This document shows, in pieces, positions 6,232 through 10,819 of a stretch of 64,000 nucleotides of DNA. The first letter of the stretch is position 1, and every line of letters begins with the position of its first letter. The stretch covers positions 310,001-374,000 of IMG/VR virus record IMGVR_UViG_3300044957_000763; one strand, written 5' to 3'. Position numbers and translations under genes: made by a program. The notes under the pieces were generated by a model. That model did not search any database and had not been told where the DNA came from. It was given only the letters and a program-made list of their open reading frames with translations.

Positions 6232-7089
6232 ATGAGTGGTATACTCATTATAGAGGTATTAATATCTGTGCCCAAACCAAAGCAATATACTGTCAGTAGT
6301 AATCTCGAGTTGCTACATGCGATTTTTAATGCTCGAGTTGTTTCTCCGTACTGTGATTTGTCCGATATTGAGCTTTGCACCATGGTTCATAGGTCTGAGC
6401 ATCGAAATGCGGCGCGAAGTGAGTTGTTGCGGCGGCATGCGCCACTTATAGCTTCGCACGTTGTTCGTTGTTTCAATCGAGGTGTTGGTGGTTCTGAGTT
6501 AGGTGACTATGAGAGTTTAGCTGTAACGATTGCGTTACAGGCATACGACGAATATGACCCCAATCGCGCAGCTTCGCCAAGTTCTTACATGTTTGGTTTG
6601 GTTTTACGGAGGTTGTTAGACGCCCAGCGTCGCACTTCGCTCGAGTCGGATTGTCGTTGGCCGATTCGCAAGTTTCAATTTCGAGCTTGGTTGAATGGCG
6701 ATTACGACCACAATCCAGAATTTCGAAAGAAATTCGAGATAGAGCACGGTGTCACTGAGGCCGACCGGGCCGAGATGATTGTGATGTATAGTCATTTGCT
6801 TCATGGTCATGGTGTATATGTCGCTCCGAGTTCTTTGGATGCCAGCCCTGCTAGTGGTTCATTGTTAAATGATTCCGGGGCCGCCAGTGAGGAAGTGATT
6901 ATCAACCGAGTTCTGATAGAGAAAGCGTTTTCGAGTTTGAATGATGATGTAGACCGCCAGGTACTACATCTTTTTGCTGTTGAAGACCGGTCGATGGTTG
7001 AAATTTCGAAGGAGTTAAAGTTGCCATTGCCAGAGGTGAGAAAAAGAATCAAACGCTCTCAGGCGCATTGTGTAGCAGTTTTGTCATAA
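6232..7089 (+). CDS. sigma70-family RNA polymerase sigma factor (divergent, group 3-like)
   Basis: Region 2-like ARSELLRRHAPLI...AYDEYDPNRAASPSSY; SLD; region 4 HTH DRQVLHLFAVEDRSMVEISKELKL. Confidence 0.75.
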   Translation: MSGILIIEVLISVPKPKQYTVSSNLELLHAIFNARVVSPYCDLSDIELCTMVHRSEHRNAARSELLRRHAPLIASHVVRCFNRGVGGSELGDYESLAVTIALQAYDEYDPNRAASPSSYMFGLVLRRLLDAQRRTSLESDCRWPIRKFQFRAWLNGDYDHNPEFRKKFEIEHGVTEADRAEMIVMYSHLLHGHGVYVAPSSLDASPASGSLLNDSGAASEEVIINRVLIEKAFSSLNDDVDRQVLHLFAVEDRSMVEISKELKLPLPEVRKRIKRSQAHCVAVLS

Positions 7090-9133: not shown

Positions 9134-9203
9134 TTGGAATTAGTGTATGGCAACACATCCGGGGTTGAACCGGAAGATGCGGGTTCAATTCCTGCGTTCC
9201 GAT
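9134..9203 (+). tRNA. tRNA-Gln(UUG)-like, atypical anticodon loop, CCA not encoded
   Basis: Cloverleaf: acceptor TTGGAAT/GTTCCGA, D stem GTGT/ACAC, anticodon stem TCCGG/CCGGA with loop GGTTGAA, T arm GCGGG-TTCAATT-CCTGC. Confidence 0.75.
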
Positions 9204-9314
9204 AAAAACATGGTGTGTCGGGCACTGTTGTAAAATTTAGAACAAGAGCGCGGAAAACGACTTCGGTCGGGCATCGCTCACAAAATTAAACTTTACAAAC
9301 AAATTTGAAGAAAA

Positions 9315-9344
9315 GAAAAGCCACTACTAAAGTAGTGGCTTTTC
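9315..9344. terminator. bidirectional intrinsic terminator
   Basis: GAAAAGCCACTACT/AGTAGTGGCTTTTC perfect inverted repeat. Confidence 0.8.
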
Positions 9345-9480
9345 GCTTTATAAGAGTCTTGGTCTTAATTCACTTAGCGCAAAAAATCGAGCTACGGGGC
9401 AGCGGCGCTGGTTAGGTGTTTGGTAGACCAGGGAGCACGACGAGAGGTACGACTTCCACTTGATACATGCTGCCCCGCAA

Positions 9481-9576: not shown

Positions 9577-9689
9577 CGGTGTAATATTCCGGCGGCCTAG
9601 GTTCAAACGGACAGATTTTCGAGCTTTTTTCGAAAAAAGTCTCTTAGGGCATTATATTTTCCGACGTTTCTGGGCATAATATAATGTAC

Positions 9690-10235
9690 TTCCGCGAATG
9701 GAACGAGAAAATCGAAACGAGAAATCGTGGCGCGATTAAACTCCTCCAGGTCGAGAGACAAACTACGAAAACACTGGTTTTTTATCAGAATATCAGAAAC
9801 GTGTCGCAAGTGGTCGCGGAATTCGAAGAACAAGCGTAAGCTAGACTCTGGAACGCCACCGAGTACGGTCTTCGATGCAGGCAAGCCTCAATCGCTTTGC
9901 CGAACGTGAAAAATTTCATATCACCGACTGAGGAACGAGTCTGGAATAGCCCCCAGACAGACTGCACGGACAGTGAGTATCCAACAGAGCTCGTGAACGA
10001 AAGGAAGCTAGTAACGAGAAGCCTGGCAGGCGGAAAGAAATCGAGTCGTGAGATTCGTCGGTGGTATGAAAACTCGATAATATTGCAGGGGAGGGCTCCG
10101 ACGAATCGTCCCCTTGGATGAAGCCGGTCCGCTTAACCCCTGCAATGTTGATTTGCCCTGTAGGTCTTCGGACTGACGACGACAGTTTCATTTGTTCAAA
10201 AAGAGGCAGACCTTCGGGTCTGTCTTTTTTGTTTT
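9690..10235 (+). ncRNA. candidate large structured ncRNA
   Basis: No convincing ORF; GNRA/UUCG-capped hairpins; 10-bp long-range stem; -10-like box upstream; terminator 10201-10235. Confidence 0.5.
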
Positions 10236-10339
10236 ATGCTATACTCTGTTTGAAATCATTTCGCGGCCCCGGAAACCAGCTTCGCTGGCTGAAGAATCTG
10301 AGCGGCCCCGGAAATCGCGGCGCAGGAGTAAAACGAATC

Positions 10340-10819
10340 ATGGGATTAGACATGTATCTCTCAAAGCGTACCTATGTCAAGAACTGGAGTCACATGAAAC
10401 CAGAAGAGCGACATGAGGTCAGTGTAACTCGTAACGGTTCGACCGTTACTGCTATCAAGCCCGAACGCGTTTCGTACATCGTCGAAGAGGTGGCGTACTG
10501 GCGCAAGGCAAATGCCATTCATGACTGGTTTGTCAAGAACTGTCAGGATGGTGTCGATGAGTGCCAGGAGTCATATGTTTCACGTGAACAGCTTCAGGAA
10601 TTGCTTGACGTTGTCAACGCGATTCTCGCTGCGCCGGCGGGTGAAGAGCGTGACCGTCTGGCCGCTGAGACCCTACCACCTGTGGCTGGTTTCTTCTTCG
10701 GAAGCACGGACATTGACGAGTACTACTACGAGGACCTTGAGTTCACGCAGGAAACTCTGACTGAGCTCTTAGCTGAACCGGACGAAGGCGAAAGATTCAT
10801 CTACCAGTCGTCCTGGTAG
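10340..10819 (+). CDS. conserved phage hypothetical protein (MGLDMYL.../YWRKANAIH type)
   Basis: Start moved to ATG 37 nt after motif 10303. Confidence 0.85.
   Translation: MGLDMYLSKRTYVKNWSHMKPEERHEVSVTRNGSTVTAIKPERVSYIVEEVAYWRKANAIHDWFVKNCQDGVDECQESYVSREQLQELLDVVNAILAAPAGEERDRLAAETLPPVAGFFFGSTDIDEYYYEDLEFTQETLTELLAEPDEGERFIYQSSW

What the first reader, a model, noticed from the sequence alone, without database searches (positions are those of the whole stretch)
9690..10235. Candidate ~500-nt structured ncRNA between the tRNA and the array
Seen: no credible ORF; -10-like CATAATATAAT at ~9676-9686; hairpins GTC-GAGA-GAC (~9750), GTCTGG/CCAGAC (~9939-9958), CTCGT/ACGAG around a GAA..AGTA internal loop (~9990-10018), GAGTC-GTGA-GATTC (~10043) and GGTC-TTCG-GACT (~10162); long-range ATTGCAGGGG/CCCCTGCAAT (10082/10137); strong terminator. 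Established: large phage ncRNAs such as GOLLD and ROOL often lie near tRNAs. I cannot assign a family, so it may be new.
Basis: partly seen in the sequence, partly recalled or inferred. Interest (0 to 1): 0.62.

Follow-up and report, generated by a model that had tools for sequence, protein, structure and literature searches.

The report
New large structured RNA in a lake megaphage
The flagged stretch is a real, about 550-base non-coding RNA gene of a 479-kb lake-water phage; it belongs to a previously undescribed RNA family that is more conserved than the neighbouring protein gene and has a base-paired fold supported by compensatory changes, but its function is unknown.

Summary
Confirmed and extended. 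Window 9687-10236 (+) has no conserved reading frame under any code. It lies between a conserved -10 box and an intrinsic terminator whose stem is kept by compensatory changes.

Nine distinct homologues came from syntenic lake and freshwater metagenome contigs. The 390-nt core is 91% identical between pairs, against 78% for the adjacent protein gene. An 18-helix consensus fold keeps 99.4% of pair cells. Ten pairs carry compensatory changes, against 3.3 in shuffles, and 45 G-U cells stand against one C-A, so the + strand is the functional one. A variable hairpin sits at a fixed position, and two hairpin loops mostly stay within the GNRA class.

No Rfam 15 family matches, including ROOL, GOLLD, RNase P, tmRNA and SRP. 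The family was found only in this phage clade, once per genome.

The window's copy is atypical. It lacks the consensus -35 and a roughly 92-nt 3' module that all relatives carry, yet its core shows no excess private changes.

Best reading: an independently transcribed, trans-acting structured RNA, analogous but not homologous to ROOL and GOLLD. No transcript data exist, and the biochemical role is inferred only.

The parts
9624..9639 (.). Perfect 16-nt palindrome (C T6 CG A6 G) just upstream of the promoter. It is invariant in all homologues and partly duplicated in L064/L081. Possible operator or bidirectional element between the RNA gene and the divergent mini-gene.
   Evidence: Sequence; alignments.
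9649..9680 (+). Promoter. The -10 box CATAAT (9675-9680) is preceded by TGG. All nine relatives have TTGACA, a 17-nt spacer, then TGG-CATAAT (consensus -35 plus extended -10). The window's copy has TTATAT in place of the -35 and one extra G before the -10.
Evidence: Alignments.
9687..9821 (+). 5' domain. Helix H1 (9690-9696/9815-9821) closes a multi-branch junction. Inside are a long bent arm H2-H4 (9699-9748), the GNRA hairpin H5 (9750-9759, loop GAGA or GAAA), and H6 (9762-9766/9810-9814), which carries a hairpin at 9767-9809 that varies in sequence and length. Positions 9686-9772 are almost invariant. The transcription start is inferred at about 9686-9690.
   Evidence: helices 1-6, mostly invariant and so uninformative; most homologues fold a different hairpin at the same position.
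9822..9913 (+). Central domain: H7 (9823-9829/9869-9875) enclosing H8-H10, then hairpin H11 (9880-9901).
   Evidence: H9 has 3 compensatory pairs, all in L049. H11 has 1 compensatory pair and several G-C to G-U changes.
9914..10072 (+). Domain 2, the best-supported part. The 14-bp long-range helix H12 (9914-9927/10058-10071) encloses five helices. H13 is 9928-9936/9977-9987. H14 is 9939-9944/9953-9958. H15 (9962-9973) has a GNRA loop in most relatives. H16 (9990-9994/10014-10018) has a 19-nt near-invariant loop holding GAA...AGUA. H17 is 10021-10031. H18 (10042-10057) has loop GUGA.
   Evidence: Alignment A2 has 95% column identity. H16 has three adjacent pairs switching U-A to C-G in 4, 3 and 2 sequences. 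H12 has compensatory C-G to U-A (L060) and U-A to C-G (L063). Covariance model R1 scores 190.9 bits here and hits nowhere else in the genome.
10079..10149 (+). 3' domain: a 13-bp outer helix (10079-10091/10137-10149) around an inner three-stem fold. It is present in 7 family members, replaced by unrelated sequence in L064/L081, and absent in L065, so it is dispensable for the family.
   Evidence: pairs switching G-C to U-A and G-C to A-U; the outermost pair has four standard pair types.
10150..10198 (+). Poorly conserved linker holding the small hairpin near 10160-10172 and a CTGACGACG motif. All nine relatives carry a conserved ~92-nt multi-stem module at this point; the window has lost it.
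   Evidence: Alignment; fold of the module; nhmmer finds the module nowhere in the 479-kb genome.
10199..10236 (+). Intrinsic terminator: a 14-bp stem with a UUCG loop, then a U-run. It marks the 3' end of the RNA.
   Evidence: The stem sequence differs between homologues but always pairs; 10 of its pairs show compensatory changes.

Best explanation
Window 9687-10236 (+) is a stand-alone gene for a ~550-nt, multi-domain structured non-coding RNA. It belongs to a new family found so far only in one clade of freshwater megaphages, where members are 0.55-0.7 kb long.

Shown:
- The sequence is non-coding.
- It is flanked by a conserved sigma-70-type promoter and a covariation-supported intrinsic terminator.
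- A second conserved extended -10 box follows the terminator, so the downstream genes likely have their own start.
- The core is under stronger purifying selection than the adjacent protein gene.
- The fold is kept by compensatory and G-U changes on the + strand only.

Inferred:
- Host RNA polymerase transcribes it from the start of infection as a discrete stable RNA.
- It acts in trans through its tertiary structure, as a ribonucleoprotein scaffold, a ribozyme or a self-assembling RNA. I place it in the phage's take-over of RNA and translation metabolism, because it belongs to an RNA-gene cluster (tRNAs plus two small structured elements) in a genome with 62 tRNAs and a tmRNA.
- This makes it a functional analogue, not a homologue, of ROOL and GOLLD.

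The window's copy is a natural variant. It has a weakened promoter and lacks the 3' module that all relatives keep.
For: - Non-coding.
- Fold strand bias: z-score -3.35 on + against -0.99 on -.
- Homologues: nine distinct ones in syntenic contigs.
- Conservation: core pairwise identity is 91% against 78% for the adjacent CDS. In L063 the neighbouring protein is 67% identical while the RNA core is 89% identical.
- Fold: 100 consensus pairs in 18 helices, 99.4% of cells paired, 10 compensatory pairs against 3.3 +/- 1.3 shuffled (0 of 500) and 1-4 in slid controls.
- Strand: 45 G-U cells against one C-A cell, counted from the table.
- Terminator: 10 compensatory pairs.
- 3' domain outer helix covaries.
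- Promoter: -35, 17-nt spacer and extended -10 conserved in all relatives.
- Variable hairpin at a fixed position.
- Unpaired columns are 72% invariant, nearly as conserved as paired ones at 78%. This suggests tertiary or partner contacts.
- Single copy per genome.
- tRNAs lie upstream in all relatives whose contigs reach that far.
- Genome-wide tRNA and tmRNA content.
Against: - No transcript evidence: no RNA-seq run holds this phage.
- Only 10 closely related sequences (89% column identity). Most helices are invariant and therefore untested, and covariation rests on about 6 helices and few independent events.
- No partner protein, target or chemistry can be named.
- No complementarity to the adjacent 77-copy motif.
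- The window's own copy lacks the consensus -35 and the 3' module, so it may be impaired.
- The family is narrow: nothing in GTDB species genomes, nothing real in IMG/VR, nothing in five more distant jumbo-phage records.
Confidence: 0.62

Rival explanations
1. The RNA family is real, but this window's copy is a crippled or decaying allele. Loss of the -35 box, shifted extended -10 spacing and deletion of the 3' module make it poorly expressed or non-functional in this phage.
For: - All nine relatives have TTGACA-17-TGGCATAAT; the window has TTATAT and an extra G.
- All nine relatives carry the ~92-nt 3' module; the window lacks it, and it is nowhere else in the genome.
- Hairpin H15 has lost its GNRA loop and has a C-A mismatch only in the window.
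Against: - The window has only 3 private substitutions in the core, within the range of the others (1-6; L049 has 25).
- The -10 box and terminator are intact.
- The 3' part of the family is modular anyway: the 3' domain is absent or replaced in three relatives.
- The phage is found with identical sequence in several independent lake studies, so this allele is not a one-off assembly artefact.
Confidence: 0.2
2. It is a cis-acting leader of the downstream ~49-kb gene block. One version would be a processive-antitermination or other co-transcriptional element that lets polymerase read through the many hairpin-plus-U-run sites between the block's genes. In that case the 'terminator' at 10199-10230 would be a regulated attenuator.
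For: - The RNA gene sits immediately upstream of the first copy of the 77-copy motif, in the same orientation.
- RNA and motif co-occur in the same clade, and both are absent from more distant phages.
- 13-24 motif copies form terminator-like hairpins.
Against: - A strong, covariation-maintained terminator ends the RNA.
- A conserved extended -10 (TGCTATACT/TGCTATAAT, 10237-10245) follows it, so the block likely has its own start.
- Known antiterminator RNAs (HK022 put, EAR; from my own knowledge) are 5-8 times smaller.
- No RNA-motif complementarity.
Confidence: 0.1
3. It is a DNA-level element, such as a replication origin, packaging site or regulatory protein-binding region. In that case the conservation reflects protein binding rather than RNA structure.
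For: Extreme nucleotide conservation with few substitutions; a short AAATCGAG-like word recurs, and an invariant palindrome lies at 9624-9639.
Against: - Compensatory changes keep helices.
- The G-U versus C-A asymmetry is strand-specific, which DNA-level selection does not predict.
- A promoter and a terminator bracket the element.
- The AAATCGA word is only mildly enriched.
Confidence: 0.04
4. It is a leaderless mRNA (or dual-function RNA) for a small peptide that starts at the ATG at 9684, right at the predicted transcription start.
For: An ATG lies 4-8 nt after the -10 box in all homologues, and the first 18 codons are identical or nearly so.
Against: - That identity is at nucleotide level, with almost no synonymous variation.
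- One-base deletions shift the frame after codon 18 in L049 and L081.
- The frame ends at eight different lengths between 37 and 144 aa.
- Conservation continues for 300 nt beyond the stop.
Confidence: 0.03
5. It is an extremely diverged RNase P RNA. By eye, strings resembling the five conserved regions of bacterial RNase P RNA occur in the right order in the relatives: a GAGGAA-AGUC-like string, CAACAGAG, GUGAA-GAAAGG, GAUGAA and ACAGAA-GG-UUA.
For: Only my recollection of the E. coli M1 RNA sequence compared with the alignments. A phage with 62 tRNAs could use such an enzyme.
Against: - The RF00010 covariance model finds nothing at E<=10 in the whole genome, while it rings in 11 of 14 control genomes (8 over the cut-off).
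- cmscan of all Rfam families at E<=10 lists no RNase P family for the window or for a full-length relative.
- The would-be P4 5' strand is locked in an invariant local hairpin (H14).
- The would-be P4 3' strand lies in the module that the window lacks, and it does not covary with its supposed partner.
Confidence: 0.02

Closest known systems
ROOL RNA (Rfam RF03087) and GOLLD RNA (RF01998)
   Same: All are large (ROOL averages 581 nt), ornate, multi-domain bacterial or phage RNAs of unknown function. They are often in phages or prophages and near tRNA genes (PMC5737381). The RNA here is 0.55-0.7 kb, phage-encoded, downstream of tRNA genes, with its own promoter and terminator.
   Different: - No sequence or structure match to either covariance model at E<=10.
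- Much narrower distribution: one megaphage clade, against several bacterial phyla.
- Far higher sequence conservation. ROOL has few highly conserved nucleotides; about three quarters of the columns here are invariant. Part of that is due to shallow sampling.
Phage T4 stable RNAs 'species 1' and 'species 2' (rnaD, rnaC) in the tRNA gene cluster
   Same: Phage-encoded stable RNAs of unknown function located next to the phage's own tRNA genes (from my own knowledge, not checked here).
   Different: The T4 RNAs are only ~120-140 nt and are co-transcribed and processed with the tRNAs. The RNA here is four times larger and has its own promoter ~480 nt beyond the tRNA.
Bacterial RNase P RNA (RF00010/RF00011)
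   Same: Similar size class, purine-rich conserved single-stranded strings, several GNRA hairpins, and a plausible link to tRNA metabolism.
   Different: Covariance models do not match. The defining P4 pseudoknot is not supported. The overall helix topology differs: a 14-bp helix encloses the region that would hold CR-I to CR-III.
Processive antiterminator RNAs (HK022 put, EAR)
   Same: Position at the head of a long same-strand gene block that contains many terminator-like hairpins.
   Different: Those RNAs are 60-120 nt and act in cis without an intervening terminator and promoter. Here a strong terminator and a new promoter separate the RNA from the block.

Membership tests
Structured non-coding RNA gene (generic criteria) | No conserved open reading frame | tested here: met
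   Stops of mixed types in all six frames. The only recurrent ATG frame is frameshifted in 2 of 9 homologues and ends at variable positions.
Structured non-coding RNA gene (generic criteria) | Base pairs kept by compensatory substitutions, above controls | tested here: met
   - Core: 10 compensatory pairs against 3.3 +/- 1.3 in shuffles (0 of 500) and 1-4 in slid controls; 99.4% of cells paired.
- Terminator: 10 further compensatory pairs.
- 3' domain: 3 further compensatory pairs.
- Caveat: 9-10 related sequences, and most helices are invariant.
Structured non-coding RNA gene (generic criteria) | Sequence conservation exceeding neighbouring coding sequence | tested here: met
   91% against 78% mean pairwise nucleotide identity.
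Structured non-coding RNA gene (generic criteria) | Own promoter and terminator, defined strand | tested here: met
   Conserved -35/-10 in relatives, -10 in the window. Covarying intrinsic terminator. 45 G-U cells against 1 C-A cell, and a fold z-score of -3.35 (+) against -0.99 (-).
Structured non-coding RNA gene (generic criteria) | A discrete transcript is made | not testable with these tools
   All 19 runs that hold the sequence are listed as DNA, none as RNA. The laid contigs are DNA.
ROOL (RF03087) / GOLLD (RF01998) | Match to the family covariance model | tested here: not met
   Not listed at gathering score or at E<=10 for the window or a full-length relative.
ROOL (RF03087) / GOLLD (RF01998) | Genomic context: phage or prophage, close to tRNA genes, length over 500 nt | tested here: met
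   479-kb phage record. tRNA-Gln 480 nt upstream and 1-2 tRNAs upstream in relatives. Length 553-711 nt.
Bacterial RNase P RNA (RF00010/RF00011) | Match to the covariance model | tested here: not met
   RF00010 on the whole genome: 7 candidates scored, none at E<=10, while controls ring in 11 of 14 genomes (8 over the cut-off). No RNase P family in cmscan at E<=10.
Bacterial RNase P RNA (RF00010/RF00011) | P4 pseudoknot between CR-I and CR-V with a bulged U | tested here: not met
   By inspection of the alignments:
- The CR-I-like string is part of the invariant local hairpin H14.
- The CR-V-like string pairs locally within the 3' module.
- Variation in that string (L060, L064, L065) is not compatible with P4.
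- The window lacks the module altogether.
tmRNA | tRNA-like domain plus tag reading frame | tested here: not met
   ARAGORN finds only tRNA-Gln in the window. The genome's tmRNA is elsewhere, at 144131-144485. No Rfam tmRNA match.

The most novel reading that the evidence does not exclude
This is a founding member of a new class of large, highly conserved, multi-domain RNAs encoded by freshwater megaphages. It would be made early by host polymerase and have a sophisticated biochemical role of its own: catalysis, or an RNA-only or RNA-protein assembly acting on tRNA, translation or the phage's unusual 77-gene block. Its modular 3' end would be a part that evolution adds and removes.
Probability: 0.45. 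Interest if true: 0.75.

Novelty: new variant of a known kind. Interest (0 to 1): 0.6.

Why it matters
Bacterial and phage RNAs longer than about 400 nt with conserved complex folds are rare. Apart from rRNA, group I and II introns, RNase P and tmRNA, only a handful of classes are known (OLE, GOLLD, ROOL, HEARO, raiA), and each has proved biochemically unusual.

A further class would add a tractable example to the open question of what tRNA-adjacent large phage RNAs do. It has three useful properties:
- It sits in the RNA-gene cluster of a 479-kb phage that carries 62 tRNAs.
- About three quarters of its core alignment columns are invariant across relatives whose proteins have diverged to 67-81% identity.
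- It has natural deletion variants: no 3' domain in L065, a replaced 3' domain in L064/L081, and no 3' module in this window.

The core is only ~390 nt, so it is small enough for probing and cryo-EM.

Tried and rejected
**Known families**
- Rfam at gathering score on the whole window and on seven homologous loci gave only tRNA.
- Rfam at E<=10 on the region and on a full-length relative gave only terminator-driven noise: CsrC, MicC, BTnc231, snoR145, RT-3.
- The RNase P idea came from motif strings I recalled. RF00010 finds nothing in the genome, so I rejected it.
- SRP-like and tmRNA-like readings have no model match either.

**Alternative genetic code**
- No single stop reassignment opens a frame. 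No other code was used anywhere.

**Homologue searches that gave nothing**
- GenBank phages by blastn and megablast: none.
- IMG/VR via the downstream protein: 32 loci at <=58% identity (<=53% full length), none with the RNA and no synteny.
- IMG/VR via the upstream sigma factor: one weak hit.
- IMG/VR pattern scans with the 3' helix, a 16-mer and a 22-mer: chance hits only, or none.
- GTDB species genomes with two invariant ~20-mers: none.
- Covariance model R1 on five distant jumbo-phage records and on 27 other loci: none.

**Natural variation from reads**
- Contigs of four other lake and sediment runs that lie on the RNA are 100% identical to the window there, so they give no covariation information and no RNA evidence.

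**Pairings tested and dropped**
- Alternative pairing 10052-10061 with 10098-10107: not kept in L060 or L063, so rejected.
- Base-pairing between the RNA and the 77-copy motif: weaker than in shuffled sequences.
- AAATCGA word as a shared protein site: only about 4-fold enriched in the block, so not pursued.
- All-against-all column covariation for pseudoknots: too noisy with 9 sequences.

**Neighbouring proteins**
- Pfam and PHROGs give no function except a sigma-70-like factor at 6232-7089.

Full report
**Where the window lies.** The window is bases 310001-374000 of a 478,840-bp IMG/VR virus record with direct terminal repeats, rated 100% complete. The genome has 44.5% G+C and carries 62 tRNA genes (63 ARAGORN tRNA calls, one of them listed twice) plus a tmRNA. 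DNA identical to the window occurs in lake-water and freshwater-sediment metagenomes from 19 studies. None of those runs is listed as RNA.

**The observation.**
- Between the tRNA-Gln(UUG) at 9134-9203 and the first long gene at 10340 there is no credible reading frame.
- All six frames of 9607-10340 hold 6-10 stops of mixed kinds, so no stop reassignment helps.
- As RNA, the + strand folds better than its shuffles (z = -3.35; 0 of 100 shuffles as good). The - strand does not (z = -0.99).

**Finding relatives.**
- GenBank phages and IMG/VR gave nothing useful.
- A word search with the downstream 159-aa protein found relatives at 65-83% identity. Fetching their contigs gave syntenic loci.
- One 20-mer scan of metagenome contigs added two more loci.
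- In all there are nine distinct homologues besides the window: L049, L054/L055, L056 (partial), L060, L063, L064, L065, L080 and L081.
- All share the gene order: tRNA(s), small elements, this RNA, the 159-aa gene, then the 429-aa gene.

**Conservation.**
- The 390-nt core (9684-10072) is 91% identical on average between pairs, against 78% for the adjacent coding sequence.
- In L063 the neighbouring protein is only 67% identical while the RNA core is 89% identical.
- Positions 9686-9772 are almost invariant.
- Unpaired columns are 72% invariant, nearly as conserved as paired ones at 78%.
- The only recurrent frame starts at the ATG at 9684. One-base deletions shift it in L049 and L081, and it ends after 37 to 144 codons. 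The constraint is therefore not on a protein.

**Structure.**
- RNAalifold on nine core sequences gives 100 pairs in 18 helices.
- Counted on that structure, 99.4% of pair cells are standard pairs. Ten pairs carry changes on both sides, against 3.3 +/- 1.3 in column shuffles (0 of 500) and 1-4 when partners are slid by 1-3 columns.
- The best-supported helices are:
  - H16 (9990-9994/10014-10018): three adjacent pairs switch U-A to C-G in 4, 3 and 2 sequences.
  - H12 (9914-9927/10058-10071): independent compensatory changes in L060 and L063, plus several C-G to U-G steps.
  - The outer helix of the 3' domain (10079-10091/10137-10149).
  - The terminator stem (ten compensatory pairs).
- Helices H1-H8, H13, H14 and H17 hardly vary, so they are neither supported nor contradicted.
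- The table holds 45 G-U cells against one C-A cell. On the opposite strand these would be mismatches, so the functional strand is +.
- Most homologues fold a different hairpin at the same place, 9767-9809.
- The H5 loop stays within the GNRA class (GAGA or GAAA). The H15 loop does so in eight of ten sequences (GCAA or GCGA; not in L049 or the window). The H18 loop (GUGA) is invariant.
- An alternative pairing, 10052-10061 with 10098-10107, is not kept in L060 or L063.

**Ends of the gene.**
- All relatives have TTGACA, a 17-nt spacer and TGG-CATAAT just upstream of the conserved RNA. That is a consensus sigma-70 promoter with an extended -10, so I infer transcription by host polymerase.
- The terminator is conserved as a structure rather than as a sequence.
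- A conserved TGCTATACT or TGCTATAAT box follows directly after it (10237-10245). The downstream genes therefore probably have their own start.

**How the window's copy differs.**
- It has TTATAT where the others have TTGACA, and one extra G before the -10.
- It lacks a ~92-nt multi-stem module that all nine relatives carry between the linker and the terminator. That module is nowhere else in the genome.
- Its H15 loop is no longer GNRA.
- Yet the core has only three private substitutions, within the range of the other sequences.
- The 3' part of the family is modular in any case: the 3' domain is replaced in L064/L081 and missing in L065.
- I therefore regard the window's copy as a variant that may be weakened, not as an obvious pseudogene.

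**What it is not.**
- No Rfam 15 family matches the window or the relatives at gathering scores or at E<=10. That covers ROOL, GOLLD, OLE, HEARO, RNase P, SRP, tmRNA, 6S, the group I and II introns and the known ribozymes.
- By eye I saw strings that recalled the five conserved regions of RNase P RNA, in the right order. That rests on my memory of the E. coli sequence only.
  - The RF00010 model finds nothing in the whole genome, while it rings in 11 of 14 control genomes (8 over the cut-off).
  - The supposed P4 strands are engaged in local, conserved hairpins. I reject this reading.
- A covariance model of domain 2 (R1) hits the genome once, at 190.9 bits. It hits nothing in five more distant jumbo-phage records or in 27 other loci.
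- Two invariant ~20-mers are absent from 185,579 GTDB species genomes.
- The family is therefore, as far as can be seen, confined to one clade of freshwater megaphages, with one copy per genome.

**Most likely mode of action.**
- Shown: a conserved, non-coding, + strand, base-paired element bracketed by a promoter and a terminator.
- Inferred: a discrete, early, stable RNA that acts in trans through its three-dimensional structure.
- Several features fit a scaffold, a ribozyme or a self-assembling RNA better than a simple antisense regulator:
  - its size;
  - its several domains and GNRA loops;
  - the 19-nt near-invariant loop of H16 with its GAA/AGUA elements;
  - the strong conservation of unpaired bases.
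- Its place in an RNA-gene cluster of a tRNA-rich phage points to RNA or translation metabolism, but that is a guess.
- The closest known things are ROOL and GOLLD. Both are large ornate RNAs, often in phages and near tRNAs, of unknown function (PMC5737381). They are the closest by context and size, not by homology.

**Surroundings.**
- The motif (C/G)CGG(C/T)CCCGGA occurs 77 times in the genome. All copies are on the + strand and all lie between genome positions 320263 and 369372 (window 10263-59372). That block has 51% G+C against 44% elsewhere.
- The motif starts a median 38 nt (interquartile range 38-39) before the next start codon. In 53 of 77 cases it lies within 12 nt after a stop. In 13-24 cases it forms the 5' arm of a terminator-like hairpin.
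- It is kept in the relatives and starts there too just after this RNA gene. It is absent from more distant phages.
- Most genes of the block lack a Shine-Dalgarno sequence.
- A phage sigma-70-like factor is encoded 3 kb upstream, at 6232-7089.
- The RNA shows no complementarity to the motif. A functional link is possible but unsupported.

**Limits.** There are no expression data. Only ten closely related sequences are available, most helices are invariant, and no partner or chemistry is known. 

Noticed in passing
window 10263-59382 (genome 320263-369372): The motif (C/G)CGG(C/T)CCCGGA occurs 77 times, all on the + strand and all within one ~49-kb block of 51% G+C (the rest of the genome is 44%).
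- It starts a median 38 nt (IQR 38-39) before the next start codon, and usually lies right after the previous stop.
- In 13-24 copies it forms the 5' arm of a hairpin followed by a U-run.
- Most genes in the block lack a Shine-Dalgarno sequence.
- It may be a phage-specific promoter giving near-leaderless mRNAs, or a start-associated RNA signal.
- It is conserved in the relatives and absent from more distant phages.
   Followed up: partly
window 6232-7089 (+): A phage-encoded sigma-70-like factor (Pfam Sigma70_r2 and r4; PHROG sigma factor) lies 3 kb upstream of the motif block. It is a candidate reader of the 77-copy motif.
   Followed up: no
window 9576-9481 (-): A 31-aa zinc-ribbon mini-gene (CxxC, 11 residues, CxxC) is transcribed divergently from the RNA gene. 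It is conserved at protein level in seven relatives (31-34 aa core); my CxxC pattern search missed it in L060, although the DNA aligns there. It is cleanly absent in L063.
   Followed up: partly
window 9396-9478: An ~85-nt conserved structured element. A 9-bp closing helix (GGGGCAGCG / CGCTGCCCC) has a compensatory change in L060, and an inner hairpin switches A-U to G-C in L060 and L063.
- The strand is unclear: alifold gives -31.5 on + and -28.2 on -.
- It could be a small + strand RNA behind a TATAAG/TATAAT box at about 9345-9352.
- It could instead be the 3' structure and terminator of the minus-strand mini-gene.
- It persists in L063, which lacks the mini-gene.
   Followed up: partly
window 9246-9345 (+): A conserved hairpin (GAGCG...CGCTC, switching to GGGTG...CACCC in L063) is followed by a 14-bp bidirectional terminator downstream of the tRNA(s). 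It is probably the trailer of the tRNA transcription unit or a small RNA.
   Followed up: partly
window 10237-10245 (+): A conserved extended -10 box (TGCTATACT, or TGCTATAAT in three relatives) lies directly after the RNA's terminator. It is the likely promoter of the first gene of the block.
   Followed up: no
window 9134-9203; L049 3518-3655; L063 3730-3868; L080 2068-2207; L064 800-866: The tRNA slot upstream of the RNA changes identity between relatives: Gln(UUG) alone; Gln+Ile(UAU); Gln+Arg(UCU); Lys(UUU)+Ile(UAU). In L064/L081 ARAGORN gives a tRNA with a four-base anticodon (attg) and no assigned amino acid.
   Followed up: no
genome G000 (outside the window): 157728-157803, 233368-233442, 144131-144485: ARAGORN calls tRNAs with anticodons CUA ('Pyl') and UCA ('SeC'), which would be possible stop-codon suppressors, and a tmRNA. 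Genes in the window read normally under code 11.
   Followed up: no
L083 4307-6001: A more distant relative (its 159-aa protein homologue is 63% identical) has a 1.7-kb ORF-free gap at the equivalent position. The gap has no tRNA, no Rfam match and no match to model R1. It may hold a different, non-homologous RNA in the same place.
   Followed up: partly
L027 827-1214: ARAGORN calls a permuted tmRNA 3 kb upstream of the 159-aa gene homologue in an unrelated IMG/VR contig.
   Followed up: no
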